Counted from the first letter of the stretch, positions 36,019 through 63,912 are shown. The stretch is 64,000 nucleotides of DNA from Macrostomum lignano (GCA_002269645.1 NIVC01000413.1:372001-436000), one strand, 5' to 3'. Numbers and translations are program-made. Notes: generated by a model from the sequence alone, not told the origin.

Positions 36019-36717
36019 TTAAAGTGAAGCTTGGGGACTGTTGGACTCCTTGAAGGAGGGGAAGAATGTTGTATATTGCAAAGGCATGCGATGCGTAGGG
36101 GTAGTTCGGGGACAGCGTTTCTAGAAACTTCCACCGCGGACTTGTTTACGCATAGTTCCAGAAGTTTCCTTCCCCGGTCTTTCTAGAACTTTCCTTCCCC
36201 GCATGCATAAATATACGAGCCGCCCTCCTATTGGCCAAGCCCCTCTTTTGGTGCCACTGAGCGCCCGGATAATTATCTATCTTGTTTCTGCGTTCGTTAA
36301 TTCAACAACAGAACACTCTAACCTCATATCCGTGCTAATCTCCCACGGAGCCCAGCTGCACCACCTGTGCGGCAGCTTGGCAGACAGGTGCAACCACTTG
36401 CACTTCGCCATGTCCAAGGCCAGTCCCAAAACCATAGACAGCACCTTGGACGAGGTGTTTCGCACCTACCCAAGCGAAGCGGACGGAATGTACGCCCTGA
36501 ATCGTCGGGGTGAGACCCCCAAAGCCGCGCTGATGAGGCGCACCGAGGAGGCTACGCTGTGCGCTTGGCGCGAGCCGCACCTGCCTGGTCAGCTGACTCG
36601 GATTCTGGAGCGAATTCCTTAAAATCAGCTTTTTCAGTATTGCGTTGAAGGCGATTTTCAGGGGGGGGGGTGGATTTTTAGTGGGAGTTGAAGGTGATTA
36701 TCAATGGGGTTGAAAGC

Positions 36718-43075: not shown

Positions 43076-46000
43076 TTAGTCATGCAAATCCTCTCCGTTA
43101 GCCAGCATTCGTTGGACCCGATCGTCATTTCCGTGCTGGACCTGTCCGTCACTGGCGGGCTCTACACTGCCTAGCCGACTATTCTCGGTTGTCTCATTGA
43201 TTGTCAGCCGCTCTTCGTCAACCTCCTCGTCTTCATCGTCGGTGGTCACGTGACCGTTAGAGATAATCTCGGGATAGATTGGAGCCAGGAGGAGGCGCAA
43301 TTCCGGGTCGTCGCTAGCCAAATCCATCGGGGTTTCGCCGCGCTGACAAAATTTATAAAAAATTAGAGCTTAATATAGAGTTGGTTTAGTCCCCAAAAGG
43401 GCCGTTTTGCATGCAGTAGATTTGCCATTGATATTAATTAAATCAGTTTTAGTATAGCTTAGAAAGTTAGAAGCCAATAAAAATCGATGATATGAACTGT
43501 TAAAAGTTGGAATTAATTTAGTTTAAGAAACCTTCTATCTAAAGTATACTTTATTATATTACTTTCCTATATATTTCTACTATAAGTAGAGTAGCTTTTT
43601 TAAAAATTAATTTCAGTATTTTGAAATTTCTACTATAAGTAGAGTATAAAGAAACTTCTTAGCTCAAAAAAAGATGCAAAGTTTTAGATTTGGCTATCAG
43701 AATTACTTTTCAATAAATATAAACAGACGTCATTAGACAGTAGCTTAAACTAAATTACCAGAGATTCTCGCTCAGGATTGGCTCCATAGCTAATCAGCAG
43801 TTCAACGATGCTCTTCAATTCCCGATTAACGGCCCAGTGCAGCGCCGTCCAGCCTGACATATCGGCGGCGCCAACATCAGCGCCGTGGTCCAACAGACAC
43901 CTGGCCAGCGGCAGGTGTCCGTGATAAACGGCAAACATCAGCGGGGTGAAGTCGGCTTCGCCGCGAGCGCCGGACTCTGGCGGCTGGCTGCGATCGTCGA
44001 TGCCGAGGCCGGGACAGGCGCCGGGTGCCAGCAGCTGCTCGGCAATGTCCACTAGGGCGCGGGCGAAACGAGACTGATCCAACGGCGCCGATGCGGGCTG
44101 GTGCGCCTGGCGCCGGGCGCGCCGATCAGCTGCTGCAGCGGCTGCTGGCTTGCCTGGGAGAGCAGTTGGGGCATTGCGTGGCGCCTACTGAAGTAGCCTA
44201 GCAGAGGGGCGTGGCGCCCTCTGAACCTAACCAATGAAGATGGAGTGGCGTCCCTGAATCTGCTATGACGCCTCCCTTGAAGTGACGGTTGTTTGGTTTG
44301 TGAGCTGGGTAACTGTGGGGGGCTTGTTTATTTAACTTCGCTTTGTCACCTTGTTTGCAGCTTGCGATCAGTAAATCATTGTGTACTCTATGCGTACTCT
44401 ACTCTGTTCCACGTGCATTTTTGCGCTAGCCATTGCCTCGCCCCTTAAGTCGCTACCATTTTGTACTCTCTCCACTCACAGTGTCAGTGCATCAGTGAAA
44501 TCCAATATTTACAATATTTAAGCTATTTCTCTCGGTCTTCAACTCGTCAAGTACTTAGGCTATTCTACAAATATATCGCAAGCATTCACATTCGTTATTA
44601 AACAACAATCAGCTCCTGACTTTCGCGTCACGTCAATGGCGTCGCAAGCAGGCGAAATTCGGAGTCAAGAACTCAACCTCAACGATCCTGAACTCGCTGA
44701 GGCATGGATGCAGCAGCTTTCCGCCACGGCCCGCATTAAGAAACTTACGGACACGGACGAAGCGCGGGATAAGACTGACTTGTTCCTGTCCAAGGCTGGA
44801 CTACAAGCGATCCGGACGCTCTCTCTCTGATGGCCGCACCAAAAAGCTGGAGGCACTCAAATTTAGCGAAATCGAGACACTAGTAACAGCAACAATCCGG
44901 CCTGAGAAGAGGCTGGTCATCGCTGAACGCACCAGATTTCTAAGCCTCAAACAAGAGCCAGGTGAATCGATCAGCACTTACTACCGTCGGCTTCGAGCAG
45001 CGGCGGCGCTCTGCGAATTCGAGGAACTTGGGGCCAAGCAGTCCAAGGAAAACGACCTCATCGCAAATGAGGCTAATGAAGCTACAAGTAAACACATGAA
45101 GCTGGATGGCGCCTCCCTGAAGCTACCCTCCTAAAGCTGGTGTATGGCGCCTCCCTGAAGATTCACCCATGAAGCTGGCATGGCGCCTCCCTGAAGCTAC
45201 ACTCCTAAAGCTGGTGTATGGCGCCTCCCTGAAGCTACACTCCTAAAGCTGGTGTATGGCGCCTCCCTGAAGCTACACCTATGAAGCTGGTATGGCACCT
45301 CCCTGAAGCTACACTCCTAAAGCTGGTGTATGGCGCCTCCCTGAAGCTACACTCCTAAAGCTGGTGTATGGCGCCTCCCTGAAGCTACACTCCTAAAGCT
45401 GGTGTATGGCGCCTCCTCCCTGAAGCTACACTCCTAAAGCTGGTGTATGGCGCCTCCCTGAAGCTACACTCCTAAAGCTGGTGTATGGCGCCTCCTCCCT
45501 GAAGCTACACTCCTAAAGCTGGTGTATGGCACCTCCCTGAAGCTACACTCCTAGAGCTGGTGTATGGCGCCTCCTCCCTGAAGCTACACTCCTAAAGCTG
45601 GTGTATGGCGCCTCCCTGAAGCTACACTCCTAAAGCTGGTGTATGGCGCCTCCTCCCTGAAGCTACACTCCTAGAGCTGGTGTATGGCACCTCCCTGAAG
45701 CTACACTCCTAGAGCTGGTGTATGGCACCTCCCTGAAGCTACACTCCTAAAGCTGGTATGGCACCTCCCTGAAGCCACACCTAAGAAGCTGATGCAGTAT
45801 TGCGCACCCATGAAGATGGTGCAGTATGGCGCCTCCCTGAAGCCACACCCATGAAGCTGGCATGGCGCCTCCCTGAAGCCACACCTATGAAGCTGGTGTA
45901 TAGCGCCTCCCCACACCCATGAATTGAGACCCCAACTCACCATTGGCAACTGGCCAATCTGCAGCCATCAATCCGGCAGGCAGTTCCTCTTCAACACTAC

Positions 46001-46550
46001 GCAGCTGGGCAATCATAGCGGCGTACAGTGGCGACTGGTCCAGACTAGCCGTGCTCACCCGCTTGCCATTCTGACAGATCTGACTCTTCGGCGCCGCTCT
46101 GCACAGCTCGTGCAGGCAATTCCTGCCGTCGCTATTGCGCAACAGATAATCGCATTTAGGCGAGGCTAGCAGGCAGCGCACAACGCTAGGCTGGCAGAAA
46201 TAGCAGGCCATAATTAAAGCTGTCCAACCGCGCTCGTTCGCTGCGCTGGGATTAGCCCCGGCTTCTAGTAGCAGACAAACAATTTCCTCTTGGCCAGTCA
46301 TAGACGCCTGATGCAGCGCCGTATTGCCTTTGCCATCCAGGGCGTCCACTTGGCAACCGGCTTCCAGTAGCAGTCGGACAATTTCCGGCTTGCCCTGACT
46401 GGCAACGTGAATAGGGCAGGACTGGTGAGTGTGACTCATATAGTTCACATCGATACGGCCGCTGGTCAGCATCTGGCGGACTTTCCACTCGCGACCGTAG
46501 CTGCAGCTGTCCCAGAAGGCCTCCTGACGGGTGGCTGCTTGGCCCATCAC
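43076..46550 (-). CDS. Ankyrin-repeat protein (about 423 aa) with acidic C-terminal tail. Exons 46550-45941, 44153-43759, 43342-43076
   Basis: CPIHVAS, GNTALHQA, GWTALIMA, GRNCLHEL, FTPLMFA, GWTALHWA and RGETPMDLA; phase-compatible junctions (1,0). The exon 2 acceptor is inferred. Confidence 0.82.
44636..45070 (+). mobile_element. Ty3/Gypsy gag fragment (frameshifted) in intron 1 of the ankyrin gene, preceded by possible LTR-derived DNA from about 44290
   Basis: AEAWMQQL...DLFLSKAG, then in a shifted frame KRLVIAERTRFLSLKQEPGESISTYYRRLRAAAALCEFE (retrotransposon gag motif). Confidence 0.75.
45085..45915 (+). repeat. 38-bp minisatellite (CCTGAAGCTACACTCCTAAAGCTGGTGTATGGCGCCTC)
   Basis: Period 38 (e.g. 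45183 and 45221). Confidence 0.93.
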
Positions 46551-48904: not shown

Positions 48905-50400
48905 CGAAAATCCCAAAACTAAGAATCCCATTCTGCCAGAAAAATCCCAAAACTAAGAATCCCATTCTGCCAGAAAAATCCCAAAACTAAGAATCCCATT
49001 CTGCCAGAAAAAATCCCAAAACTAAGAATCCCATTCTGCCAGAAAAAATCCCAAAAATAAGAATCCCATATTCTTTCTAAAAATCCCAAAACAAAGAATC
49101 TCATTTTCCCTGAAAAATCCCAAAACTACGAATCCCATATTCTATCTAAAAATCCCAAAACTAAGAATCCCATTCTGCCAGAAAAAATCGTAAAACTAAG
49201 AATCCCATTCTGCCAGAAAAAATCCCAAAACTACGAATCCCATTCTGCCAGAAAAAATCCCAAAACTAAGAATCCCATATTCTATCTAAAAATCCCAAAA
49301 CTAAGAATCCCATTCTGCCAGAAAAAATCGTAAAACCAAGAATCCCATTCTGCCAGAAAAAATCCCAAAACTACGAATCCCATTCTGCCAGAAAAAATCC
49401 CAAAACTAAGAATCCCATATTCTATCTAAAAATCCCAAAACTAAGAATCCCATTCTGCCAGAAAAAATCGTAAAACTAAGAATCCCATTCTGCCAGAAAA
49501 AATCCCAAAACTACGAATCCCATTCTGCCAGAAAAAATCCCAAAACTAAGAATCCCATATTCTATCTAAAAATCCCAAAACTAAGAATCCCATTCTGCCA
49601 GAAAAAATCGTAAAACCAAGAATCCCATTCTGCCAGAAAAAATCCCAAAACTACGAATCCCATTCTGCCAGAAAAAATCCCAAAACTAAGAATCCCATAT
49701 TCTATCTAAAAATCCCAAAACTAAGAATCCCATTCTGCCAGAAAAAATCCCAAAACTAAGAATCCCATATTCTATTAAAAAAATCCCAAAACTAAGAATC
49801 TCATTTTCCGTAAAAAATCCCAAAACTAAGAATCCCATATTCTATCTAAAAATCCCAAAACAAAGAATCTCATTTTCCCTGAAAAATCCCAAAACTACGA
49901 ATCCCATATTCTATCTAAAAATCCCAAAACAAAGAATCTCATTTTCCCTGAAAAATCCCAAAACTACGAATCCCATATTCCATCTAAAAATCCCAAAACA
50001 AAGAATCTCATTTTCCCTGAAAAATTCCAAAACTACGAATCCCATATTCTATCTAAAAATCCCAAAACAAAGAATCTCATTTTCCCTGAAAAATCCCAAA
50101 ACTACGAATCCCATATTCCATCTAAAAATCCCAAAACAAAGAATCTCATTTTCCCTGAAAAATTCCAAAACTACGAATCCCATATTCTATCTAAAAATCC
50201 CAAAACAAAGAATCTCATTTTCCCTGAAAAATCCCAAAACTACGAATCCCATATTCTATCTAAAAATCCCAAAACAAAGAATCTCATTTTCCCTGAAAAA
50301 TCCCAAAACTACGAATCCCATATTCTATCTAAAAATCCCAAAACTAAGAATCTCATTCTCCCAGAAAAATACCAAAACTAACAATCCCCATTTTCTCAAA
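48905..50400 (+). repeat. About 33-35-bp minisatellite (AAAATCCCAAAACTAAGAATCCCATTCTGCCAGA) with variant zones
   Basis: Direct inspection. Confidence 0.93.
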
Positions 50401-50509
50401 AAATCCTAGGTCTCACAAAACAAGTTTCCAGTAAGCAAAAGTTCAGTTCAACAACTTCCCTCAAAAAAGGTTTGATTCAATCTTACGCGCACAGAACACT
50501 GCTCAATAA

Positions 50510-53500
50510 TCAATCAAAGGTGACGGTAGGGTTTTCGCCCCAAGCCGGAGCCGGCTGATTTGGCGGCAGCAGGTTCGGCTGGTTTGGCGCCACCTCGCGA
50601 GGCTGCTGCTGCTTGCTAGACACGTTGAACACCTGCGAGGAGCGAACAATGTGCAGCGGCGAGGACATGAACTCCTCGGCCGGGACCACCACCAGTCGAA
50701 CGGTGTTGGTCTGGCCGGCGTGCCAGCCGGTGCAGATGACGACCCGTTCGCCGGGTTTAACAAATTTGGAGCGAACGGCAAATTGCAGAGTGTGCGTGAT
50801 CCGCCGGTCCATGTCCTCAGACCAGTCGTCGCATTTTTCCTCTAGAAATTTTTCAGGGATCGGCAATGTTGGAATAATACTGCTAGTTTTTAAGTAGTAG
50901 TATATCATGTACAGGGAAAAATCTCTTTTAGTGGGGTTTTTAGTGTAGACCAATCTATGGGGCGTGGGAGCTCTTTAAAATAGAGGCTATAGGGTGTGAG
51001 ATCTCTATAGGAGGCGAATCTATGGGATGTGGGATCTCTATAGGAGGCGAATCTATGGGATTTTGGGATCTCTATAGGGGGCGAATCTATGGGATGTGGG
51101 ATCTCTTTAGGGGGCGAATCTATGGGATGTGGGATCTCTTTAGGGGGCGAATCTATGGGGTGTGGGATCTCTATAGGAGGCGAATCTATGGGGTGTGGGA
51201 TCTCTTTAGGAGGCGAATCTATGGGGTGTGGGATCTCTATAGGAGGCGAATCTATGGGGTGTGGGATCTCTTTAGGGGGCGAATCTATGGGGTGTGGGAT
51301 CTCTATAGGAGGCGAATCTATGGGATGTGGGATCTCTTTAGGAGGCGAATCTATGGGGTGTGGGATCTCTTTAGGAGGCGAACTTCATATAAATTGTTAA
51401 AAGTTTTTTCTGCTTAGCTTACTGAACATAAACTACTGAGCTACTAACAGTAGTTTTATCAACATAAAAATTATATCAATTTACCAGAAAAATACACCGG
51501 ACGCAGGCCCCGATACAGGTGACACTGCCGAGCTACGGACATCTGCCTGGTGACAGTCAGAATCGGACAAGGCGGTCGGTAACTAGCCACAGCGAATGCG
51601 GTCTTGCCCGTAGTTGTAACCACAATGATCGCGGCAGCTCCGTTAGTCATAGCGGCGCTGACGGCCGCAGTAGCCGAGGTGAAAGTTTCAATTTGCTCGT
51701 CTTTTGGACCCATGGCAGCCAGGCGGACGGCTTCGATACGCTTTAGGTCGACAAATTTGCGGCCGTGATAGTAGGCCGACTCGGCCTCTTGACACACCTG
51801 CGGAGTAGATGGCGGAGTGAGATTAGACCTGGGAGAGAGTGAGAAAAACTAAGAGAGAGTGAGTGAGATAGATCAGGGTGAGATATGGAAATAGATCAGG
51901 GGTGAGAGGGAGATACATCAGGGAGGGAGTGAGATAGATCAGGCAGGGATTGAGATAGATCAGGCAGGGAGTGAGTGAGATAGATCAGGCAGGGATTGAG
52001 ATAGATCAGGCAGGAAGTGAGTGAGATAGATCAGGCAGGGAGTGAGATAGATCAGGCAGGGAGTGAGATAGATCAGACAGGGAGTGAGATAGATCAGACA
52101 GGGAGTGAGTGAGATAGATCAGGCAGGGATTGAGATAGATCAGGCAGGGAGTGAGTGAGATAGATCAGACAGGGAGTGAGATAGATCAGGCAGGGAGTGA
52201 GTGAGATAGATCAGGCAGGGATTGAGATAGATCAGGCAGGGAGTGAGTGAGATAGATCAGACAGTGAGTGAGATAGATCAGGCAGGGAGTGAGTGAGATA
52301 GATCAGGCAGGGATTGAGATAGATCAGACAGGGAGTGAGTGAGATAGATCAGGCAGGGATTGAGATAGATCAGGCAGGGAGTGAGTGAGATAGATCAGAC
52401 AGGGAGTGAGATAGATCAGGCAGGGAGTGAGTGAGATAGATCAGGCAGGGATTGAGATAGATCAGGCAGGGAGTGAGTGAGATAGATCAGACAGTGAGTG
52501 AGATAGATCAGGCAGGGAGTGAGTGAGATAGATCAGGCAGGGATTGAGATAGATCAGGCAGGGAGTGAGATAGATCAGACAGGGAGTGAGATAGATCAGG
52601 CAGGGAGTGAGTGAGATAGATCAGGCAGGGAGTGAGTGAGATAGATCAGGCAGGGAGTGAGATAGATCAGGCAGGGAGTGAGTGAGATAGATCAGGCAAG
52701 GAGTGAGATAGATCAGGCAGAGTGAGATAGATTGGACAGAGAGTGAGATAGATCAGGCAGAGAGTGAGACAGATCAGATAGAAAGTGAGATAGATCAGAC
52801 AGAGAGCGAGATAGATCTGACAGAGATAGATCAGACAGAGTGAGATAGATCAGGCAGAGTGAGATGATAGATCAGACAGAGATAGATCAGGCAGAGAGTG
52901 AGATAGATCAGAGTGAGATAGATCAGCAACCAACTCCCCAAAAGGTCGTGACCCCACACTGCAACTATTTACTCTGATTAGGCAAATTGGTTAACTATTA
53001 AAAATTCAATTAAAACAGAAAAGCACCCAGACTATAGTACCAAACAGTAGTAGGAGTATTAGAAAATTCAATTACACCGACAAAATATCCCTCTATTGCA
53101 TACAATCTACTGAGCAAGCTAGTCCCAGTTCGGTAGGCTGGGATAATACTATTGCGAACCCGCAGAAATGATTACTTTCTCCCGCTGATAAAAGATGCCA
53201 CGGAAGAAGAGGCCGGGAAATTGCAAAGGAGAGAGCGTGGTCAGAATGCTTTATCATGCAGCAGCCCTGCCTAGGCCAAAATAATTGATGCTGATTCAGA
53301 ATTAGTTAGACTTTATATAATTACACATATATATTATATATAGGCAAAGTAGAAAGTGTACACCTTCATCTTTGAAACCAGTCTTGCTTTCATAAATGTA
53401 TAAACTAACACTGCTAGTCTGATATACATCGACCTCCGACACAACATAAATTGCAAACACATTGACGATGTACTGACCACCCACAAAAGGTTATAGACCA

Positions 53501-56500
53501 CCATATTAGAGCGATACAGATCACCGACATATTAGAGCGACACATAGATCACCGACATATTATAGTAACACATTGACCACCGACACACTAGAGCGACACA
53601 TAGATCACCGACACACTAGAGCGACACACACTGACACATCAAAACGACACATAGACCACCGACACATTAAAGCGACACATAGATCACCGACATACTAGAG
53701 CGACACATAGATCACCGACACATCAAAGCGACACATAGACCACCGACATACTAGAGCGACACATAGACCACCGACACATAGATCACCGACATACTAGAGC
53801 GACACATAGATCACCGACACATCAAAGCGACACATAGACCACCGACACATTAAAGCGACACATAGACCACCGACGCATTAAAGCGACACATAGATCACCG
53901 ACACATTAAAGCGACACATAGATCACCGACACAATAAAGCGACACATAGATCACCGACACATTAAAGCGACACATAGATCACCGACATACTAGAGCGACA
54001 CATAGACCACCGACACATTAAAGCGACACATAGATCACCGACATACTAGAGCGACACATAGATCACCGACACATCAAAGCGACACATAGACCACCGACAC
54101 ATTAAAGCGACACATAGATCACCGACATACTAGAGCGACACATAGATCACCGACACATCAAAGCGACACATAGACCACCGACACATTAAAGCGACACATA
54201 GATCACCGACACATCAAAGCGACACATAGATCACCGACACATCAAAGCGACACATAGATCACCGACAAATTAAAGCGACACATAGATCACCGACACATTA
54301 AAGCGACACATAGATCACCGACACATTAAAGCGACACATAGATCACCGACACATTAAAGCGACACATATATCACCGACGCACTAGAGCGACACATAGATC
54401 ACCGACACATTAAAGCGACACATAGATCACCGACACATTAAAGCGACACATAGATCACCGACACATTAAAGCGACACATATATCACCGACGCACTAGAGC
54501 GACACATAGATCACCGACACATCAAAGCGACACATAGACCACCGACACATTAAAGCGACACATAGATCACCGACACATCAAAGCGACACATAGATCACCG
54601 ACACATTAAAGCGACACATAGACCACCGACACATTAAAGCGACACATAGACCACCGACACATTAAAGCGACATATATATCACCGAAAGCAGCACAGTTAA
54701 CTACACGCTCACCTGAACCATGACCTGCAGAGTCTCCAATGGAAAAGCGCCTTTGGCGGTCTCCACGCCGAGTGCCAACACGTCCGCGCCGTCAAGCACA
54801 GCGTTCGCTACGTCGGAGACTTCGGCGCGGGTGGCGCGCGGCTTATGCCGCATCGAGTCCAACATTTGGGCGGCAACCACTGCAGGCTTTTTAGCCGCAT
54901 TGGCGTGCGCAATCACGGATTTCTGGGCTAGGAATACTTTCTCAATTGGCAGGTTGCGGCCGAGCTCGCCGCGGTCCACAAACACTCCGTCGGCTACGGA
55001 TATAATATCGGCGAGGCTGATGGGGCGAGGGGATAAATGTCAGTTAGGGATTTATTATATAACCTTACCCCCCGTGCATTCCTTTCAGATCTTCTATTCC
55101 TGCCTTTCTCTGTCAGCCAATGGTAGAAGAGGCTGCTGGGTCTAGCTGCATCACAGATTAGGAATGAGGGCTAAACTATATATAGAGTGAAGGACTGACG
55201 CCATCATGTTCAAACTGAAGATTGCCATTTTTGTCTATTCTTGAAAATGAGACTCTCTGCTTTGAAAGTAATTTCAGTTAGCTGTTGTTCACAAAGTACC
55301 GTACTACCATTTTTGAAAGAGAGGTGCCATTTTCGAAGGAAGAGTTGCCATTTTTGAAGGGAGACTTGCCAGTTTCAAAGGATGAGTTGCTACTTTTGAA
55401 GGGAGAGGTGCCATTTTAAAGTAGAGGTGTCATCTTTGAAGGGACACGTGCCATTTTTAATAGAGAGGTGCCATATTTGAAGGAGATGCCATTTTCGAAG
55501 GAAGAGTTGCCATTTTAGAAGGGAGAGGTGCCATTTTTAAAAAGAGATATGCTATTTTTGAAAGAGATGCCATTTTCAAAGGAAAAGTTGCCATTTTTGA
55601 AGGGAGGGGTGCCATTTTTAAAGGAGAGGTGCCATCTTTGAAACAGAAGTGCCATTTCTGAAGGGCGAGGTGCCAGTTTTGAAGGAGACGTACCATTTTT
55701 TATTGAGTGCCATTAATAAAGGAAGAGATGTCACTTTATTGAATGCCATTTTTGTTAATAAGTGCCACTTATGAAAAGAGCGGTGCCATTTTTGTTCAGT
55801 GCCATTTTTGAAGGGAAATGTGACATTTCAGATTAAAAAACTGCCGCATTAAGCGTTGATTTAAGTTCGATTCTACGATTCTAAAATTCCATTAAGCATT
55901 AATCAAAATATGTACTTTTAGTTTTCTTGTAACTAAAACACCCAGTATCTCACTTCTTCAAGCCGTCCGAAGACTCGATGCGAGCCAGAACTTTCGTGTT
56001 CAGCGAGAAGGGGCCCAGCACTTTTCGAATTTGAGTGATGGCCAGTCCCGACTCTGCGAAGCCGCAGCAGACAATGTCCACCTGTGGAGATTCAAATAAT
56101 TTGGTGGGGAATGTACTTCATGGTGATGCTAGGCGGGGAATGTACATTGTGGGGTGGGTGATGCTAGGCGGGTAATGTACATTGTGGGGTGGGTGATGCT
56201 ACGCGGGGTGAGCGGGGCACTTATATTAGAGACGTATGCACATTGTGCGATTGTAATGTTTGGCGGGGAATGCGAGTCTCAGTTGTGGGATGTTGGGTGA
56301 GGTAAGAAAATACTCTAAAAAGGAGTTCACTAAAGGAAAATTGGCGCTCGAAAATATACGAGAGTAAAGAGACCAAAAAGAACATGATAAGCTATTATAT
56401 AACAACTTGCTCGAAATCGCAAGAGAGCGCTATGCTTCAATACATTATATGCAATAATTCGCTTATCTAGATTCCATTTTCGTAGTTAACCATGAAGTTT

Positions 56501-59500
56501 TCCATCGAGTAATTACAGTGTTACGCAATAAGATAAGAGATACTTCAAACACAGAACTCGGCAATGATTAGACTAACGAGGGGTTGCCAACGTGTAAGCC
56601 TATTTAGCTCGTAAATTCAATTATGCATACAAAAAGCTGTAAACCGGGTGTAACTCGTAGGCCCCCAAATTATGGGTGAGATATAAAGGGATAGTTAGAT
56701 GGGCCAGCAACTGAGGATCTGGGAGGCTGGCCCAGCAACTGAGGATCTGGGAGGCTGGCCCAGCAACTGAGGATCTGGGAGGCTGGCCCAACAACTGAGA
56801 ATCTGAGAGGCTGGCCCAGCAACTGAGGATCTGGGAGGCTGGCCCAGCAACTGAGGATCTGGGAGGCTGGCCCAGCAGCTAAGGATCTGAGAGGCTGGCC
56901 CAGCAACTGAGGATCTGGGAGGCTGGCCCAGCAGCTAAGGATCTGAGAGGCTGGCCCAGCAACTGAGGATCTGGGAGGCTGGCCCAGCAACTGAGGATCT
57001 GGGAGGCTGGCCCAGCAGCTAAGGATCTGAGAGGCTGGCCCAGCAACTGAGGATCTAGGAGGCTGGCCCAGCAACTGAGGATCTGGGAGGCTGGCCCAGC
57101 AACTGAGGATCTGGGAGGCTGGCCCAGCAACTGAGGATCTAGGAGGCTGGCCCAGCAACTGAGGATCTGGGAGGCTGGCCCAGCAACTGAGGATCTAGGA
57201 GGCTGGCCCAGCAACTGAGGATCTGGGAGGCTGGCCCAGCAATTGCGGATCTGGGAGGCTGGCCCAGCAACTGAGGATCTGGGAGGCTGGCCCAGCAACT
57301 GAGGATCTGGGAGGCTGGCCCAGCAATTGCGGATCTGGGAGGCTGGCACAGCAACTAAGATAAATTTCAGAAATTATTCTAAAGGGACCTAGGGAGCGAA
57401 ATGATTATAAATATATAAAGAATGTGGCCCAAGGACAGATAAATTAAAAAAAGAATCTTGCTCGCAAAATAATACTAATGGATACGTGAAGTAGGCATAG
57501 ATAAAAATCTTGAAATTACAGAATAGCTTGCAGTTATTCCGCCATAGCAGTAAGAGATGATATATATTTCATATGCATACAACAGGGTATAGGTTTCATG
57601 TACTTTTAATAAATACAAACAGACGTCCGAATACTGTAAGGATGAAGGCAGCACAGAAATGGACGAAATACACTGGAGGCAGATGGTAAGCGGCAGAGAT
57701 TAAGGCAGGCGGATGCGGTGATTAGAAAATGCGCAGAGACGGATCCCGTGGCAATAAGGGGAATTAAACAGATTAAAGGCAGCTTATGCGCCACATACTG
57801 CCTAGTTGTGAAGTCACTCTGTTGGTAACCATCAGCTCACTCTATAGACAACCATCAGGTCACTCTATGGGTAATCATCAGGTCACTCTATGGGTAATCA
57901 TCAGGTCACTCTATGGGTAATCATCAGGTCACTCTATGGGTAATCATCAGGTCACTCTATGGGTAATCATCAGGTCACTCTATGGGTAATCATCAGGTCA
58001 CTCTATAGGTAATCATCAGGTCACTCTATGGGTAATCATCAGGTCACTCTATGGGTAATCATCAGGTCACTCTATAGGTAATCATCAGGTCACTCTATAG
58101 GCAACCATCAGGTCACTCTATGGGTAATCATCAGCTCACTCTATAGGCAACCATCAGGTCACTCTATGGGTAATCATCAGGTCACTCTATGGGTAATCAT
58201 CAGGTCACTCTATGGGTAATCATCAGGTCACTCTATGGGTAATCATTAGGTCACTCTATGGGTAATCATCAGGTCACTCTATAGGCAACCATCAGGTCAC
58301 TCTATGGGCAACCATCAGGTCACTCTATAGGTAATCATCAGGTCACTCTATAGGTAATCATCAGGTCACTCTATAGGCAACCATCAGCTCACTCTATGGG
58401 CAACCATCAGGTCACTCTATGGGCAACCATCAGGTCACTCTATAGGTAATCATCAGGTCACTCTATGGGCAACCATCAGGTCACTCTATAGACAACCATC
58501 AGGTCACTCTATAGGTAATCATCAGGTCACTCTTTAGGTAATCATCAGGTCACTCCATAGGTAATCTGATTATGATTACCTAAGTGACCTGATGATATGA
58601 TTACCTATCATCAGGTCACTCTACATGTATAGGCAACTATCAGGTCACTCTATAGGATACAATCAGGTACTACGAGCGTAGTACTAGTGTGCCTACTAGT
58701 AATCATAACCCATGTAATTTCGTTATACTATATTCTAAAATATTTTACCACTGTAATCAATGAGATATATCTTCGTGGCAAGTTAGCAAATGACGTCAAT
58801 CAATTGCAATAATTATATATCCCCGGTTGGCCATTCCGTGACTCCTCAAACTAGGAAAAAACTTTTTTTTCCTGTCGAGTTGGGAAATTGCCGGGACTGT
58901 ATTAATCTAATTAACTCAGCACTGGCCATAATAATAATAGAATGCTAATATAAATCATATTGATCTGAGTGCGTGAACTGTATGGATGCTTAGAGATGAT
59001 ATAGAATGGGATAGAGATAGAGAGGTAGAGATAGAAGGGGATAGAGATAGAGAGGTAGAGATAGAAGGGGATAGAGATAGAGAGGTAGAGATAGAAGGGG
59101 ATAGAGATAGAGAGGTAGAGATAGAAGGGGATAGAGATAGAGAGGTAGAGATAGAAGGGGATAGAGATAGAGAGATAGAGATAGGATAGGATAGAGATAG
59201 AGATAGAGGTAGAGATAGAATGGGATAGAGATAGAGGTAGAGATAGAATGGGATAGAGATAGAGATAGAGGTAGAGATAGAATTGGATAGGGATAGAGGT
59301 AGAGATAGAAGGGGATAGAGATAGAGAGATAGAGATAGGATGGGATAGAGATAGAGATAGAGGTAGAGATAGGATGGGATAGAGAGAGATAGAGGTAGAG
59401 ATAGAATGGGATAGAGATAGAGATAGAGGTAGAGATAGAATTGGATAGGGATAGAGGTAGAGATAGAAGGGGATAGAGATAGAGAGATAGAGATAGGATG

Positions 59501-62500
59501 GGATAGAGATAGAGATAGAGGTAGAGATAGAATGGGATAGAGATAGAGATAGAGGTAGAGATAGAATGGGATAGAGATAGAGGTAGAGATAGAATGGGAT
59601 AGAGATAGAGATATAGGTAGATATAGAAGGGGATAGAGATAGAAGGAGATAGAGATAGAGAGATAGAGATAGAATAGGATAGAGATAGAGGTAGAGATAG
59701 AATGGGATAGAGATAGAGATATAGGTAGATATAGAATTGGATAGGGATAGAGGTAGATATAGAAGGGGATAGAGATAGAAGGAGATAGAGATAGAGAGAT
59801 TGAGATAGAATAGGATAGAGATAGAGATAGAGGTAGAGATAGATTGGGATAGAGATAGAGATAGAGGTAGAGATAGAATGGGATAGAGATAGAGGTAGAG
59901 ATAGAATGAGATATAGGTAGAGAGGTAGAAATACAATGGGATGTAGGTAGAAAGGTAGAGACAGAATGCCTGTACCTGATTCTCCACCGCGAAAAGCAGA
60001 TCCTGTTTGTACTTCTCAGCCACAGCGTATCGATATTCGGCCATCCTGGGCAGCCGGACAACACGAGAGCTCTGCAGAATGCCGCCCTGCTCAACTAGGC
60101 AGCGAATGCTTCCAGTTAGGGACGCTGAAAATAGGAAATCAGATTAGAATCAGGGATTAATGAGCTGCAGCATATTGCCTTTTTATTACAGCTGGAAGCC
60201 TGTTTCTTGGAAAAATATGTCATATGATATATAAGACATCGACACGAGGCACTGAAGAAACTCTACTGCATTCGTACACATCATGCTAATGATGTAGCAT
60301 TTCTCGTAAACTAATTTTCGTTTACATGAATGAATGAAATTTGAAGAAAAATAAATCAATTAAACTGCGTTACACTCAGGGCACGAGTGAAGTCAAACTG
60401 CAATGGATGCACGCTACATACTACTGAGAATATATCTTACATTCATAATTTATGCATAGTTTGCGGCATGCGTTGTTCAATATTGATAACAAATTAAAAA
60501 TGATTCTTTCAGACTACAATCAATTTATTACCTACTTATTATCAATCAATCAATCAATGTAAATCAATTTAGCACAAGTAGTATGTATTCATTTTCAAAA
60601 CATTTTTATTTCCATTTATCACAAACCTGAAGGACGACTTGGTGAATAGTTGGTGAAGCCTGCGATTATGATATTTCATTAGTTTGCCTTTTGCTTTGCT
60701 TTTAAAATTAACAAGTGCTGAGTTATAAACAAAGTAAATAATAACGTATTATATTTCAGCTATTGCGCGGCGCATCTGAAGGCTACGTACGGCTGTTCAG
60801 TCCAAAGACAGGGGGGGTCGCCACCCTCAATTACCCCAGCTAATGCTGGCACCCATTTTACAGCTGGGTGAACTGAAGCAATGCAGAGTTAAGTGTCCTG
60901 CTCAAACGACACAAATTGTTCCGAGTTGGAGCAGGAATTGAACCCCCGACCTTCAAGTAGAGTCCGACGCTCTAACCACTAGGCTAAAACCACTTTAAAT
61001 ATAATTGAAAGAGTAGAGTAACAGTGTTTAACACATACTGATACAATTATAAACAATTTTTTGAAGATTAAGTGATAGTAAATACACAAAGACTTTCTAA
61101 TCGTTAGGCACATACACTCTAAATTTCTCACCTTTCTCCCGAGCAATCAGCATCACTGTGCCGTCATCAATATCGATCCTATCGCCAACATTGATAGCGT
61201 GAAAAGATTTACGCCAATAGGCGGTATCGATGTACAGGTGCTCGGCTGTGCAGTCGTCTTTGTAGGCTTCATCAACTGTGATGGTGACGAATTCGCCTTC
61301 AGAGACTTTGAACGAGCCGTTGACAGCGCCGCTAACCTGTCCGGTACGCAGGGTTGGCGCGGTGATGTCCACGGCCACGGCCACCATGTAGGAGTCCATG
61401 GACTCCGAGTTCAGTTTGGCCTCTTCGGCGCGTACAGTTTTGATGAGTTGTGAGCAGTACTGCAGGCGGGAAAGATGGGGTTGGCTTTCTAGTGTCATTT
61501 AATATTGGCTTTTATTACTATAGAATTATTGAAACTATGACCAGATGAGCCTCAAGTCACTTTAAAGTAACTACGAAATTATGAGGTTACTCGGTAGGTA
61601 ACCATCAGGTAAACTCATCAGGTGATCATCAGGTCACTCTATAGTTGACCATCATGTCACTCTATATGTAAACATCATGTCACTCTATAGTTAACCATAA
61701 GGTCACTCCGTAGGCAACCATCATGCCACTCTATAGATAACCATCAGGTCGCTCTATAGGCAACCATCAGGTCACTCTAAAGTTGACCATCAGGTCACTC
61801 TAAAGTTGACCATCAGGTCACTCTAAAGTTGACCATCAGGTCACTCTAAAGTTGACCATCAGGTCACTCTAAAGTTGACCATCAGGTCACTCTAAAGTTG
61901 ACCATCAGGTCACTCTATAGTTGACCATCAGGTCACTCTATAGTTGACCATCAGGTCACTCTATAGTTTACCATCAGGTCACTCTATAGTTGATCATCAG
62001 GTTACTCTATAGTTGACCATCAGGTCACTCTATAGTTGACCATCAGGTCACTCTATAGTTGACCATCAGGTCACTCTATAGTTGACCATCAGGTCACTCT
62101 ATAGTTGATCATCAGGTCACTTTATAGTTGATCATCAGGTCACTCTATAGATAACCATCAGGTCACTCTATAAGTAACCATTTAGGTCACTATATAGGTT
62201 TTAGGTAACCATCGAGTCACTCTAGACTTAATCATCAGATCACTACATCAGGACATTAGGACAGGTAATCCAGAATCACCCCCAAAGCTCACCTTGTAGG
62301 AGCCGAGCGTCAGGTTAATGCGGGCAATATTCATACCCCGCACAATCATACGACGAATCATTTCAGGCGTTTCGCAAGACGGTCCTTAAAACGAATAAGA
62401 AAATAAATTCACATATAGATCGAAGAAAAATATCTCAACATACTACTGAATCATGGCTGATTAAGTAGCATAGTAAGTAGCATACGGGAGTTAAAAATAA

Positions 62501-63912
62501 CCAGCCTGAATATAGTAGGAAAACCTGTAGAAAGTTTGGAAGCCGGCCAGAAAAAAATTCCAGAAACCGAACTGGAACTGTGCCGGGATTTTGCTGCCCA
62601 GTCTTTCCGCCCGCAACATTGGGAAGAATGCAGTTGGGGATAAATTAAGGGACTGAACGAAGATGGGAAACGCGAGCGTGCAAGAGCGTACGTATTATCA
62701 TTTCACCCAAAAGTTGGCCTACAAGGGCGGTTACCGATCCCTTTCCCATCCTAGCACAGCAGTGCAAACTCCAAGCCGGCGATATATCAAGTATTATAAT
62801 CTTAATAAATCAATTCTGACAATATAATAGAAAGCATTGAAAAAATACATTCACAAGCACGATTAGAAATCGTTCGTCAAAAAATGATATTAGTAAATAT
62901 TTTATATCGAATATAGAATTTCTGTTAGCATAGGAAATAGAAAATGTAGAACATTTATTCTTTACTTTGCTAGTTATAATACTAGTACAGTCAGATACTA
63001 TAGACTTTATCTTAGACATTTAGTAAATGCTGATTGGTTGCTCAGTAAATTATATAGATTAAAAGTTCGCTGACACAATATTTATTTTCCTGACACCCTC
63101 TTCCATTACCTGACACCTCATTCGTTTCCCTGACGTACCCTCTCCTATTCCCTGACATCCTATTAATTTACCTGACACCCTGTTCGTTTCCCTGACACCC
63201 TGTTCGTTTCCCAGACACCCTATTCATTTCCCTGACACCCTATTCCTTTACCAGACACCTCATTCGTTTCCCTGACGTACCCTCTCCTATTCCCTGACAT
63301 CCTATTAATTTACCTGACACCCTGTTCGTTTCCCTGACACCCTGTTCGTTTCCCTGACACCCTGTTCGTTTCCCTGACACCCTGTTCGTTTCCCTGACAC
63401 CCTGTTCGTTTCCCAGACACCCTATTCATTTCCCTGACACCCTATTCCTTTACCAGACACCCTATTCCTTTACCAGACATCCTATTCATTTCCCTGACAC
63501 CCTATTCATTTCCCTGACACCCTATTCATTTCCCTGACACCCTATTCCTTTACCAGACACCCTATTCCTTTACCGGACATCCTATTCATTTCCCTGACAC
63601 TCTATTCCTTTACCAGACATCCTCTTCATTTACCAGACACCCTATTGATTTAGCAGACAACCTATTGATTTCCCTGACATCATATTATTCATTTCTCAAC
63701 ACTGATATAGACTCACCCAGCGTGCACATGATGCCGGTGACGCGAGGATAAATTGGCAAATTATCGATGTCTAATCGGCACAGGTGAGTCAGCTGAGTCT
63801 CACGGCTGTGCATGATGCGCGACTGCGTGTTCATTCGATAGTAGCCGGGCATGGAGCTGCGGAGGGACACGGGGATAGATATGGGATGCGTGATTTGGGG
63901 AAGCATGAACAT
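50510..63912 (-). CDS. Divergent pyruvate-kinase-like protein (about 613 aa). Exons 63912-63717, 62384-62293, 61459-61132, 60124-59976, 56081-55954, 55016-54713, 51797-51485, 50841-50510
   Basis: [10 protein letters not shown]...[93 protein letters not shown] and TGW..TNT, in PK order. All seven junctions are consensus and phase-compatible (1,0,1,0,2,0,1). The start codon is uncertain. Confidence 0.92.
51015..51380 (+). repeat. 33-bp intronic minisatellite (GAATCTATGGGGTGTGGGATCTCTATAGGAGGC)
   Basis: Direct inspection; PK-like intron 7. Confidence 0.93.
51830..52925 (+). repeat. 21/25-bp purine-rich minisatellite (GAGATAGATCAGGCAGGGAGT)
   Basis: Direct inspection; PK-like intron 6. Confidence 0.93.
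53495..54685 (+). repeat. 28-bp minisatellite (GCGACACATAGATCACCGACACATTAAA)
   Basis: Direct inspection; PK-like intron 6. Confidence 0.93.
55310..55830 (+). repeat. Degenerate 21-bp repeat (GAGAGGTGCCATTTTTGAAGG)
   Basis: Direct inspection; PK-like intron 5. Confidence 0.85.
56700..57356 (+). repeat. 28-bp minisatellite (GGCTGGCCCAGCAACTGAGGATCTGGGA)
   Basis: Direct inspection; PK-like intron 4. Confidence 0.95.
57825..58665 (+). repeat. 23-bp minisatellite (ATCATCAGGTCACTCTATGGGTA)
   Basis: Direct inspection; PK-like intron 4. Confidence 0.93.
58990..59965 (+). repeat. (GATAGA)-based purine-rich compound satellite
   Basis: Direct inspection; abuts the donor of PK-like exon 4. Confidence 0.93.
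60765..60993 (-). mobile_element. tRNA-derived SINE (copy 4) in PK-like intron 3
   Basis: The reverse complement shows TAGCCTAGTGGTTAGAGCG, GGTTCAATTCC, the central domain and the same 3' region as copy 1. Confidence 0.82.
61600..62250 (+). repeat. 23-bp minisatellite (ACCATCAGGTCACTCTATAGTTG), same family as 57825-58665
   Basis: Direct inspection; PK-like intron 2. Confidence 0.92.
63090..63685 (+). repeat. 20-bp minisatellite (CCTGACACCCTATTCATTTC)
   Basis: Direct inspection; PK-like intron 1. Confidence 0.92.

What the first reader, a model, noticed from the sequence alone, without database searches (positions are those of the whole stretch)
50510..63912. Pyruvate kinase paralog with an intact frame but a dismantled active site: candidate pseudoenzyme
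Seen, with human PKM numbering from memory: NFSHG to NLTLG (S77T, H78L); DTKGPE to DITAPT (T114I, K115T); FASF to CCGF (S243G); SKIEN to ARIES (catalytic K270R); ARGD to DRGE (Mg-binding D296E); ATQ to AAQ (T328A); MLSGET to ALGVET (S362G, G363V); GSKKGVNLP to [10 protein letters not shown]73, E272, TRAE and K367 are retained. All eight exons splice in frame across about 13 kb of repeat-laden introns, which implies purifying selection. Knowledge: K270, D296, T328 and S362 are core catalytic or metal-binding residues. Inference: a non-catalytic PK-fold protein with a scaffolding, regulatory or dominant-negative role; divergent PK paralogs in other animals are often testis-biased.
Basis: partly seen in the sequence, partly recalled or inferred. 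Interest (0 to 1): 0.8.

Follow-up and report, generated by a model that had tools for sequence, protein, structure and literature searches.

The report
Flatworm pyruvate-kinase-like candidate pseudoenzyme gene
This Macrostomum lignano gene encodes an intact, transcribed and selectively maintained copy of the glycolytic enzyme pyruvate kinase that is changed at a dozen active-site positions invariant in other animals; it appears to belong to an old second pyruvate-kinase lineage shared with flukes, tapeworms and monogeneans, so it probably acts by binding rather than catalysis.

Summary
On the minus strand of 50510-63912 lie eight GT-AG-spliced exons of a pyruvate kinase (PK) homologue.

The window is Macrostomum lignano contig NIVC01000413.1. 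The gene is the transcript-derived model BOX15_Mlig003292g2. Its first coding exon lies about 1.9 kb beyond the window end, so the ATG at 63912 is probably intronic.

- **Active site:** at 19 positions invariant in 203 metazoan PKs, the protein differs at 12, including K270R, D296E, T328A, S362G and G363V.
- **Canonical PKs:** these exist in the same genome.
- **Selection:** three syntenic copies give dN/dS of 0-0.15, with introns 4-5% diverged.
- **Fold:** the PK fold is predicted confidently.

The protein is not a lineage oddity. It shares G363V, G116A, C326V and an insertion in an otherwise length-invariant loop with a second PK clade of trematodes, cestodes and a monogenean. In that clade conservation is lost mainly in the active-site segments.

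Best reading: an ancient, constrained, probably non-catalytic PK-fold protein. Loss of activity and its role are untested. Degenerate PK paralogues are known from Drosophila, so this is a new member of a known kind.

The parts
63717..63856 (-). Annotated coding exon 2, the first coding exon inside the window. Encodes (S)SMPGYY...[23 protein letters not shown]. The acceptor AG lies just upstream of 63856 and the donor GT just downstream of 63717.
   Evidence: Matches P0001 (BOX15_Mlig003292g2).
63857..63912 (-). In the transcript-based annotation this stretch is intron; the real start codon is in an exon about 1.9 kb beyond the window end (L001 10001-10086).
62293..62384 (-). Exon carrying the NFSHG-equivalent motif ARINLTLG. 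R73 and N75 are kept; F76L, S77T and H78L are changed (codons 62305-62322).
61132..61459 (-). Exon carrying the DTKGPE-equivalent DITAPT (D113 kept; T114I, K115T, G116A and E118T changed; R120 kept; codons 61346-61369) and most of the B (lid) domain.
59976..60124 (-). Exon with the end of the B domain. GSKKGVNLP becomes QSSRVVRLP (K207R at 60063-60065), followed by a remodelled hinge ([14 protein letters not shown]) that has low model confidence.
55954..56081 (-). Exon with FASF>CCGF and the PK signature strand, [12 protein letters not shown]270R is at 55980-55982 and E272 is kept at 55974-55976.
54713..55016 (-). Exon with ARGD>DRGE (A293D, D296E), ATQ>AAQ (T328A) and MLSGET>ALGVET (S362G, G363V). 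It also holds the block best conserved across the flatworm clade, [28 protein letters not shown] (PKM 330-357; this block lies within the two best-conserved 15-aa windows, 330-344 and 347-361).
51485..51797 (-). Exon for the first part of the C domain. It includes the clade-specific loop insertion: 41 residues between anchors where 201 of 203 canonical animal PKs have 32.
50510..50841 (-). Last exon. Encodes the end of the C domain (a 2-residue deletion in the GWxxGxGxTN loop) and a C-terminal tail, of which about the last 42 residues are predicted disordered. The stop codon TGA is at 50510-50512.
50842..63716 (-). Seven introns (643-3894 nt), largely made of minisatellite arrays with periods of 20-69 nt.

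Best explanation
The gene is the Macrostomum lignano member of an old, flatworm-wide second pyruvate-kinase lineage. This lineage corresponds, by inference, to the 'Clade II' PKs of cestodes and trematodes.

After duplication from the glycolytic PK, this lineage kept the three-domain PK fold, the core of the A-domain dimer surface and much of the C domain. Selection was released on the loops that bind K+, Mg2+, ADP and the PEP phosphate and that donate the proton.

The M. lignano protein is transcribed and held under strong purifying selection. It most likely cannot convert PEP and ADP to pyruvate and ATP at a useful rate. It most likely works through binding. It could bind a phosphorylated metabolite or metal in the remodelled pocket, since its charged catalytic residues are replaced conservatively (K>R, D>E). 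It could also bind other proteins, including PK subunits.

Shown here: gene structure, homology, the substitutions, the selective constraint, the predicted fold, the co-existing canonical PKs and the shared clade characters. Inferred: loss of catalysis, binding as the mode of action, and orthology with the Neodermata clade (which I rate at about 0.8).
For: **Structure and identity**
- Eight in-window exons, all GT-AG, with an intact ORF. The window is identical to the annotated gene BOX15_Mlig003292g2.
- That annotation was built only from RNA-seq and transcript assemblies (PMC5730564).
- PK and PK_C domains are present. The AF2 model has pLDDT 83.4 and pTM 0.83, and Foldseek TM normalised to PKM2 is 0.90-0.95.

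**Active site**
- 12 of 19 positions invariant in 203 metazoan PKs are changed.
- The PK signature pattern is absent from this protein and from all the clade relatives I tested. It is present in 205 of 227 other PKs.

**Canonical PKs in the same species**
- P0319, P0320 and P0321.

**Constraint**
- dN/dS is 0.127, 0 and 0.150 among three syntenic copies. There are 25 synonymous against 8 non-synonymous changes (p about 1e-9), and intron divergence is 3.9-5.4%.

**Deep family**
- Trematode, cestode and monogenean proteins share H78L/M, K115T/S, C326V and G363V in all 15 sequences, and G116A in 14 of 15.
- They also share an insertion in a segment that is 32 residues long in 201 of 203 canonical PKs.
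- NJ bootstrap for the clade is 98-100%.
- 18 of 75 departures from consensus are shared with the clade, against 6 of 74 for a molluscan control.
- Each sampled parasite also keeps a canonical PK.

**Pseudoenzyme signature**
- Within the clade, position 296 is E, G, N, S, P, T or D, and position 328 is A, S, T, H, D or G.
- Most of the largest drops in conservation relative to canonical flatworm PKs fall in active-site segments: 44-58, 73-87, 105-119, 210-224, 241-255, 259-273 and 292-306.
- By contrast, the 15-aa windows 330-344 and 347-361 stay 92-93% conserved.
Against: - No biochemical data exist for this protein or for any clade member that I could find.
- Several replacements are conservative (K270R, K207R, D296E, S77T). 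R73, N75, D113, R120, E272, R294, G295 and E364 are kept, so residual or altered activity cannot be excluded.
- Some schistosome relatives keep K270 and T328.
- Orthology with the parasite clade is not secure. Identity to that clade (39-43%) is no higher than to canonical PKs (42-43%).
- With active-site columns masked and a divergent gastropod PKM-like protein included, bootstrap for the clade falls to about 55% and the long branches cluster.
- HMM scores are only marginally in favour (571 against 533 and 578).
- No ortholog from another Macrostomum species or from planarians was found.
- I could not retrieve any tissue or expression level.
Confidence: 0.65

Rival explanations
1. It is a catalytically competent but unusual PK isozyme. 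Arg at 270, Glu at 296 and Thr at 77 would substitute functionally, perhaps with altered metal, cation or allosteric requirements and lower turnover.
For: - The charged catalytic residues are replaced by like-charged ones. R73, N75, D113, R120, E272, R294, G295 and E364 are kept.
- The fold is intact.
- Strong purifying selection is what an enzyme would also show.
Against: - Twelve changes hit positions that never vary in 203 animal PKs. They include T328A (proton donor), S362G, G363V, H78L, K115T and G116A.
- The ADP-side lid motif is rewritten.
- Relatives carry non-conservative residues at 296 (G, N, S, P, T), so the pocket is not under catalytic constraint across the family.
- Canonical PKs are present in the same genome.
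- From memory of the yeast and muscle PK literature, Lys270-equivalent mutants lose about 10^3-fold activity.
Confidence: 0.15
2. It is a Macrostomum-specific, fast-evolving duplicate. Its resemblance to the Neodermata second PK clade would be convergent: the same sites relax once catalysis is lost, and the tree grouping would be long-branch attraction.
For: - Identity to the parasite clade is no higher than to canonical PKs.
- Clade support collapses to about 55% when active-site columns are masked and another long branch (Gigantopelta) is present.
- A hemipteran PK-like protein independently shows K270R plus D296E, which shows that convergence happens.
- Intron positions do not discriminate.
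Against: - Identical rare states are shared: G363V and G116A (neither present in any of the 203 canonical metazoan PKs; the only non-clade G363V in the wider set is a second Clonorchis model of the same gene) and C326V.
- An insertion is shared at the same loop in a length-invariant segment. The Gigantopelta protein lacks it.
- Grouping with Macrostomum canonical PKs had 0% bootstrap in every analysis.
- Shared departures run at 24%, against 8% in the control.
Confidence: 0.15
3. It is a neofunctionalised enzyme. The PK barrel would be re-tooled for a different reaction on a PEP-, pyruvate- or oxaloacetate-like substrate.
For: - One metal ligand (E272), a possible second (E296), R73 and R294 remain.
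- The PEP/pyruvate-binding TIM-barrel superfamily supports varied chemistry. That is general knowledge; Pfam also lists the related HpcH/HpaI family on some PK hits.
Against: - No new conserved constellation of pocket residues emerges across the clade.
- The pocket positions are the most variable ones. A conserved new activity would predict the opposite.
Confidence: 0.05
4. It is a decaying pseudogene that happens still to be open.
For: One of the three genomic copies (L003, Mlig003292g1) has a 1-nt deletion in a GGG run at the end of exon 3.
Against: - The window copy and L002 are intact over nine exons with canonical splice sites.
- dN/dS is 0-0.15. The frameshifted copy shows 13 synonymous and 0 non-synonymous differences from the window copy, so its indel is either very recent or a long-read assembly error.
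- The gene model is transcript-derived.
- Intact relatives occur across flatworm classes.
Confidence: 0.02

Closest known systems
Canonical animal pyruvate kinase (PKM/PKLR type, EC 2.7.1.40; Pfam PF00224 + PF02887)
   Same: - Same three-domain fold (TM 0.90-0.95 to PKM2).
- 40-45% identity and ancient intron positions retained.
- R73, N75, D113, R120, E272, R294 and E364 are kept.
   Different: - 12 of 19 invariant active-site positions are changed and the PK signature is lost.
- A 9-residue insertion lies in the early C-domain segment between anchors near PKM 386 and 418. From memory, this is the Calpha1-Calpha2 region.
- A 2-residue deletion lies in the C-terminal GWxxGxGxTN loop. From memory, this is the FBP-activation loop.
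- The N and C tails are disordered.
'Clade II' pyruvate kinases of cestodes and trematodes (Zhou et al. 2025, PMC12510601). Here these are the proteins P0016, P0047, P0090, P0101, P0103, P0121, P0123, P0148-P0151, including Echinococcus W6UM60, which is annotated 'Pyruvate kinase isozymes R/L'.
   Same: - Shared derived states: H78L/M, K115T/S, G116A, C326V, G363V, VENGG>VEQGG, and an insertion in the 386-418 segment.
- Each species also keeps a canonical PK.
- The paper reports two major PK clades in cestodes and trematodes. It also reports that a Clade II member (SmPK4) is highly expressed in mature and gravid proglottids.
   Different: - The M. lignano protein alone has K270R; the parasites keep K270.
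- Its D296E is conservative, whereas most parasites have G, N, S, P or T.
- Its insertion is longer (41 against 36 residues).
- The paper does not mention catalytic-site loss and did not sample free-living flatworms.
- Equating their Clade II with my clade is an inference from taxa and protein lengths. I did not compare the sequences.
Drosophila pyruvate-kinase-like paralogues (Pykl genes), predicted to be pseudoenzymes and mostly testis-restricted (PMC11836677)
   Same: The concept is the same: divergent PK paralogues beside one ubiquitous canonical Pyk, predicted inactive from loss of critical residues, and possibly non-catalytic modulators.
   Different: - Presumably an independent arthropod origin. 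No arthropod sequence ranked between the flatworm clade and canonical PKs in the profile searches, but no Pykl sequence was examined here.
- No sequence-level comparison with the Pykl proteins was made here.
- Tissue bias is unknown for the flatworm gene.
K+-independent pyruvate kinases (bacterial and archaeal type, with Lys at position 117/118)
   Same: The hydrophobic residue at position 114 (I/L) resembles the DLQGPK and DIQGPK motifs seen in some distant PKs.
   Different: - Position 118 is Thr or Pro, not Lys, so there is no internal positive charge to replace K+.
- G116A, K270R and G363V are absent from the distant PKs carrying the DLQGPK/DIQGPK motifs.
- The K+-independent rule itself is recalled from memory (Oria-Hernandez et al. 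2006). I considered this family and rejected it.
Other degenerate PK-like proteins scattered across animals (Clastoptera arizonana A0A1B6DBL5, Pristionchus entomophagus GMS79651, Loxostege sticticalis KAL0832950, Gigantopelta aegis XP_041355957)
   Same: - They lose D296 and other pocket residues while keeping the PK fold.
- Clastoptera has the same K270R plus D296E pair.
- Gigantopelta shares T328A and E332D (AAQMLDSM).
   Different: - They lack G363V and G116A. The loop insertion was checked only in Gigantopelta, which lacks it.
- These look like independent events, which shows the phenomenon is recurrent.

Membership tests
Pyruvate kinase superfamily (homology and fold) | PK barrel domain (PF00224) and PK C-terminal alpha/beta domain (PF02887) scoring above the gathering thresholds | tested here: met
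   297 bits against a cut-off of 30, and 106.9 bits against a cut-off of 28.
Pyruvate kinase superfamily (homology and fold) | Three-domain A/B/C architecture superposable on solved PK structures | tested here: met
   AF2 pLDDT 83.4 and pTM 0.83. Foldseek against PKM2 gives E of 1e-57 and target-normalised TM of 0.90-0.95.
Catalytically competent pyruvate kinase (EC 2.7.1.40) | Catalytic Lys270 within the PK signature [LIVAC]-x-[LIVM](2)-[SAPCV]-K-[LIV]-E-[NKRST]-x-[DEQHS]-[GSTA]-[LIVM] (pattern recalled from memory) | tested here: not met
   Position 270 is Arg (203 of 203 metazoan PKs have Lys). The pattern is absent here and present in 205 of 227 other PKs.
Catalytically competent pyruvate kinase (EC 2.7.1.40) | Mg2+ ligands Glu272 and Asp296 | tested here: inconclusive
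   E272 is kept and D296 is replaced by Glu (203 of 203 have Asp). Glu could still ligate a metal, but with altered geometry.
Catalytically competent pyruvate kinase (EC 2.7.1.40) | Proton-donor Thr328 and the Ser362/Gly363/Glu364 segment | tested here: not met
   T328A, S362G and G363V are present; E364 is kept.
Catalytically competent pyruvate kinase (EC 2.7.1.40) | K+ site (Asn75, Ser77, Asp113, Thr114 carbonyl) and the DTKGPE loop | tested here: inconclusive
   N75 and D113 are kept. S77T, T114I, K115T, G116A and E118T are changed. The backbone ligand cannot be judged from sequence alone.
Catalytically competent pyruvate kinase (EC 2.7.1.40) | Nucleotide-side residues (Arg73, His78, Arg120, Lys207 and the lid motif GSKKGVNLP) | tested here: not met
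   R73 and R120 are kept. H78L and K207R are changed, and the lid motif reads QSSRVVRLP.
Catalytically competent pyruvate kinase (EC 2.7.1.40) | Measured PEP + ADP -> pyruvate + ATP activity | not testable with these tools
   This needs recombinant protein and an LDH-coupled assay.
Flatworm second PK lineage (Neodermata 'Clade II'-type) | Shared derived residues H78L/M, K115T/S, G116A, C326V and G363V | tested here: met
   All five are present. In the clade their frequency is 15/15, 15/15, 14/15, 15/15 and 15/15. G116A and G363V occur in 0 of 203 canonical metazoan PKs.
Flatworm second PK lineage (Neodermata 'Clade II'-type) | Insertion in the segment between the REAEAA and AVEA anchors (PKM 386-418) | tested here: met
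   The segment is 41 residues here and 36-48 in clade members. It is 32 in 201 of 203 canonical PKs and in Gigantopelta.
Flatworm second PK lineage (Neodermata 'Clade II'-type) | Phylogenetic grouping with the clade to the exclusion of canonical flatworm PKs | tested here: inconclusive
   NJ bootstrap is 98-100%. It falls to about 55% with active-site columns masked and a second long branch present. No ML or site-heterogeneous analysis was possible.
Drosophila Pykl-type testis pseudoenzymes | Orthology with, or common origin from, the fly Pykl genes; testis-restricted expression | not tested
   No Pykl sequences were compared and no M. lignano tissue data were retrieved. The resemblance is conceptual only.

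The most novel reading that the evidence does not exclude
Nearly all rhabditophoran flatworms, from free-living Macrostomum to schistosomes and tapeworms, carry a conserved non-catalytic PK subunit more than 500 million years old. Through its well-preserved A-domain dimer surface it would co-assemble with the glycolytic PK, or it would sense a phospho-metabolite. It would thereby tune glycolytic flux in reproductive or proliferating tissue. That would make it a flatworm-specific regulatory node absent from vertebrate hosts.
Probability: 0.15. Interest if true: 0.7.

Novelty: new member of a known kind. Interest (0 to 1): 0.5.

Why it matters
If the prediction holds, flatworms have kept a dead or nearly dead copy of a central glycolytic enzyme for the whole history of Rhabditophora. 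That implies a binding-based function still to be found.

M. lignano has transgenesis, RNAi and a transparent body, so the function can be tested directly. The result would carry over to the orthologues of schistosomes, liver flukes and tapeworms. Those orthologues are at present annotated simply as 'pyruvate kinase' and counted as glycolytic enzymes in metabolic reconstructions and drug-target lists.

The finding also adds a deep, independent case to the emerging picture of recurrent pseudoenzyme paralogues of glycolytic enzymes, alongside the Drosophila Pykl genes and other scattered insect and nematode cases. At the least, annotation pipelines should stop transferring EC 2.7.1.40 to this clade.

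Tried and rejected
1. **Expression look-ups.** The main-text search for Mlig003292 and supplement searches for Mlig003292 and Mlig028607 in three M. lignano papers found nothing. Tissue bias remains unknown.
2. **Prior literature.** I searched for earlier descriptions of a flatworm PK pseudoenzyme. I found only the two-clade tree in PMC12510601, and the Clonorchis CsPK paper, which concerns the canonical enzyme (signature IKLIAKIENHEGV).
3. **Intron positions as an orthology marker.** The positions (PKM about 51, 188, 236, 279, 381 and 476) are ancient and shared with canonical genes. They exclude a retrogene but do not discriminate between clades.
4. **Distance trees.** These are informative only in part. 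Adding the divergent Gigantopelta protein and masking active-site columns exposes long-branch attraction. With the parasite clade removed, the M. lignano protein joins no flatworm group.
5. **HMM competition.** A parasite-clade HMM against canonical HMMs gave only a marginal preference.
6. **K+-independent PK type.** Rejected because there is no Lys at position 118.
7. **Pseudogene.** Rejected on dN/dS and the transcript-based gene model.
9. **Orthologues elsewhere.** I found none from another Macrostomum species, planarians or polyclads. A canonical PK from a second Macrostomum-like transcriptome (P0027) is present.

Full report
**Where the window comes from and what the gene is**

The window is eukaryotic, at about 45% G+C, and rich in minisatellites. 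Stop-free segments on the minus strand between 50.5 and 63.9 kb carry recognisable pyruvate-kinase (PK) peptides. Reading the junctions base by base gives eight exons. All are bounded by AG/GT and join in frame to a 613-residue product that ends at a TGA at 50510-50512.

- Pfam finds the PK barrel (2e-88) and the PK C-terminal domain (8e-31).
- The closest solved structures are Aedes PK1 and human PKM2 (1e-130 and 1e-120).
- The protein search identifies the organism as Macrostomum lignano.
- Window positions 40510-64000 are 100% identical to contig NIVC01000413.1 of assembly GCA_002269645.1.

The annotated product is BOX15_Mlig003292g2 (P0001, 623 aa). It equals my model except at the N-terminus. 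It starts in an 86-nt coding exon about 1.9 kb beyond the window end and splices into an acceptor at 63856. The gene therefore has nine coding exons. According to the genome paper, the GenBank gene models of this assembly were derived solely from RNA-seq and transcript assemblies (PMC5730564). A spliced mRNA with exactly these junctions therefore exists.

**The observation**

- ARINLTLG for ARLNFSHG
- DITAPT for DTKGPE
- CCGF for FASF
- LARIES for SKIEN
- DRGE for ARGD
- AAQ for ATQ
- ALGVET for MLSGET
- QSSRVVRLP for GSKKGVNLP

To judge whether this exceeds ordinary divergence, I aligned 203 metazoan PKs recovered in the searches. At 19 active-site positions (73, 75, 77, 78, 113-116, 120, 207, 270, 272, 293, 295, 296, 328, 362-364) they are invariant apart from one gap. 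The M. lignano protein differs at 12 of them: S77T, H78L, T114I, K115T, G116A, K207R, K270R, A293D, D296E, T328A, S362G and G363V.

The protein departs from the >=90% consensus at 75 positions, against 8-10 for the canonical Macrostomum PKs. A PK signature pattern (recalled from memory) is present in 205 of 227 other PKs and absent here. The functional roles of these residues come from the rabbit-muscle and yeast PK literature, which I cite from memory:
- K+ ligands: N75, S77, D113 and T114
- Mg2+ ligands: E272 and D296
- K270 at the transferred phosphate
- T328 as proton donor
- R73, R120, K207 and H78 on the nucleotide and phosphate side

**Is it a paralogue, and is it constrained?**

M. lignano also encodes canonical PKs with every motif intact (P0319, P0320 and P0321 = BOX15_Mlig009984g2).

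The divergent gene exists in three syntenic copies, each followed by the same ankyrin-repeat gene:
- the window copy;
- L002 (Mlig028607g1), which is intact;
- L003 (Mlig003292g1), which has a 1-nt deletion in a GGG run at the end of exon 3.

Nei-Gojobori estimates are as follows:

| Pair | Synonymous changes | Non-synonymous changes | dN/dS |
|---|---|---|---|
| window vs L002 | 20 | 8 | 0.127 |
| window vs L003 | 13 | 0 | 0 |
| L002 vs L003 | 17 | 8 | 0.150 |

On the three-taxon star this is 25 synonymous against 8 non-synonymous events (binomial p about 1e-9). Alignable intron sequence differs by 5.4% and 3.9%, similar to dS (4.5% and 2.9%) and roughly ten times dN.

The frameshifted copy has accumulated no amino-acid change. 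Its indel is therefore very recent or a long-read homopolymer error. A decaying pseudogene is excluded for the window copy.

**Fold**

An AlphaFold2 model built on a 60-sequence alignment has mean pLDDT 83.4 and pTM 0.83. Only residues 1-34 and 582-623 are disordered, and there is a weak spot at the remodelled lid hinge. Foldseek places it on PKM2 with target-normalised TM of 0.90-0.95.

**An unexpected relative set**

Among the ordinary 40-45% hits, several flatworm proteins carry similar oddities. A profile search and an exhaustive HMMER search isolate a group that scores far above canonical PKs. It comprises Schistosoma spp., Trichobilharzia, Paragonimus spp., Clonorchis, the monogenean Cichlidogyrus, and the cestodes Spirometra, Echinococcus (W6UM60) and Schistocephalus. 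Each of these taxa, where sampled, also has a canonical PK.

The shared characters are:
- All 15 members, including M. lignano, share H78L/M, K115T/S, C326V and G363V. G116A occurs in 14 of 15.
- G116A and G363V occur in none of the 203 canonical animal PKs. In the wider set of 310 sequences, G116A is also absent, and the only other G363V is a second model of the Clonorchis gene.
- The segment between the REAEAA and AVEA anchors (PKM 386-418) is 32 residues in 201 of 203 canonical PKs. It is 36 in most clade members, 37 in Clonorchis, 48 in Cichlidogyrus and 41 in M. lignano. A divergent gastropod PKM-like protein has 32.

Neighbour-joining gives 98-100% bootstrap for the clade, with an internal topology that mirrors flatworm phylogeny.

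The caveats are real:
- Pairwise identity of the M. lignano protein to the clade (39-43%) is no higher than to canonical PKs.
- HMM competition is nearly a tie.
- With active-site columns masked and the Gigantopelta protein included, support drops to about 55% and the long branches cluster.

I therefore rate orthology at about 0.8, resting mainly on the rare shared states and the shared insertion. A recent Macrostomum-specific origin from the local canonical PK received 0% support in every analysis.

**Why a pseudoenzyme is the best reading**

Across the clade the catalytic positions are not merely changed but variable. Position 296 is E, G, N, S, P, T or D. Position 328 is A, S, T, H, D or G. 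Position 293 is D, G, N, R, C or S.

Most of the largest losses of conservation relative to canonical flatworm PKs fall in active-site segments: PKM 44-58, 73-87, 105-119, 210-224, 241-255, 259-273 and 292-306. Three further windows with large drops (121-135, 157-171 and 403-417) lie outside those segments. By contrast, the windows 330-344 and 347-361 ([25 protein letters not shown]) remain 92-93% conserved, and much of the C domain is kept.

Relaxed constraint at the pocket, combined with a maintained fold and surfaces, is the classical signature of a pseudoenzyme.

In M. lignano itself the charged residues are replaced conservatively (K270R, K207R, D296E). This leaves open binding of a metal or phospho-ligand, or weak activity. 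From memory, the 330-361 block contributes to the A-A' dimer interface, and the inserted loop lies in the region that forms the C-C' interface. If so, dimerisation is likely preserved and tetramer contacts altered. That is inference only.

**What is already known**

- A 2025 paper on Spirometra mansoni reports that cestode and trematode PKs fall into two major clades. It places SmPK2 and SmPK4 in Clade II and finds SmPK1 and SmPK4 highly expressed in mature and gravid proglottids. Only the Clade I enzyme SmPK1 was assayed, and the paper says nothing about catalytic residues in Clade II (PMC12510601). Equating their Clade II with my clade is an inference.
- The characterised Clonorchis CsPK carries the canonical signature (PMC5680780).
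- In Drosophila, six PK genes include 'Pyk-like' paralogues predicted to be pseudoenzymes and mostly testis-restricted (PMC11836677).
- The exhaustive search also shows scattered degenerate PK-like proteins in a spittlebug (with the same K270R plus D296E pair), a nematode, a moth and a gastropod.

Degenerate PK paralogues are thus a recurrent, known kind. What is new here is that the flatworm second clade is catalytically degenerate and that it probably reaches back to the Macrostomum-Neodermata ancestor.

**Verdict**

The candidate-pseudoenzyme interpretation is supported by every computational test available, but it has not been tested biochemically. The cellular role and tissue are unknown.

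- Confidence in the combined explanation: 0.65
- Interest: 0.5
- Novelty: new member of a known kind

Noticed in passing
window 31845-36619 (+): A Ty3/gypsy-type LTR retrotransposon with long open gag/protease and pol reading frames (RVT_1 8e-29, RNase H, integrase). It is flanked by repeated segments at about 31845-32195 and 36125-36619 that translate identically (KLPPRTCLRIVPEVSFPGLSRTFLPR) and are presumably the LTRs. Its G+C is 61-65%, against about 45% around it.
   Followed up: partly
window 9285-10901 (-): A piggyBac-type transposase (DDE_Tnp_1_7 1e-36 plus the zf-Tnp_2 zinc finger) split over two reading frames. It is probably a degraded or intron-containing copy.
   Followed up: partly
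window 19013-20152 (+): A Tc1/mariner-like transposase with HTH domains followed by DDE_3, interrupted between the two ORFs.
   Followed up: partly
window 12676-14463 (-): Two long ORFs. One, of 429 aa, has a sub-threshold Mab-21_C match (6e-4). It is preceded by an ORF with a nucleotidyltransferase-like 'GS...DIDV' motif. Together they may form a Mab21/cGAS-like gene.
   Followed up: no
window 43076-46547 (-): An ankyrin-repeat gene (422 aa in the annotation) lies immediately downstream of the PK-like gene. The same neighbour follows all three M. lignano copies, which shows the copies are segmental or homeologous duplicates rather than dispersed ones.
   Followed up: partly
L003 8569-8895 (copy Mlig003292g1, contig NIVC01003479.1): A 1-nt deletion in a GGG run at the end of exon 3 frameshifts this copy, and the annotators called only a 381-aa C-terminal ORF. 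Yet the copy has 13 synonymous and 0 non-synonymous differences from the window copy. This points to a recent lesion or a long-read assembly error.
   Followed up: partly
P0154 (Gigantopelta aegis XP_041355957) and P0244 (Clastoptera arizonana A0A1B6DBL5): Other animals carry independently degenerate PK-like proteins. The gastropod protein shares AAQMLDSM (T328A, E332D) and EEKCDDW with the M. lignano protein but lacks G363V and the loop insertion. The spittlebug protein has the same K270R plus D296E pair.
   Followed up: partly
P0002 (UniProt A0A1I8FW52, older M. lignano gene set): This 574-aa model of the L002-type copy contains a stretch (NPEIRHCARQCGQKACS) that is an out-of-frame reading of the exon encoding [14 protein letters not shown]. 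It is a mis-spliced gene model and not a real isoform.
   Followed up: no
window 49500-50406 and the introns at 50952-63679: Dense minisatellite arrays with periods of 20-69 nt and up to 48 copies (33 for the periods 20-69) fill the introns and the 3' flank. Several create long spurious ORFs on both strands.
   Followed up: no
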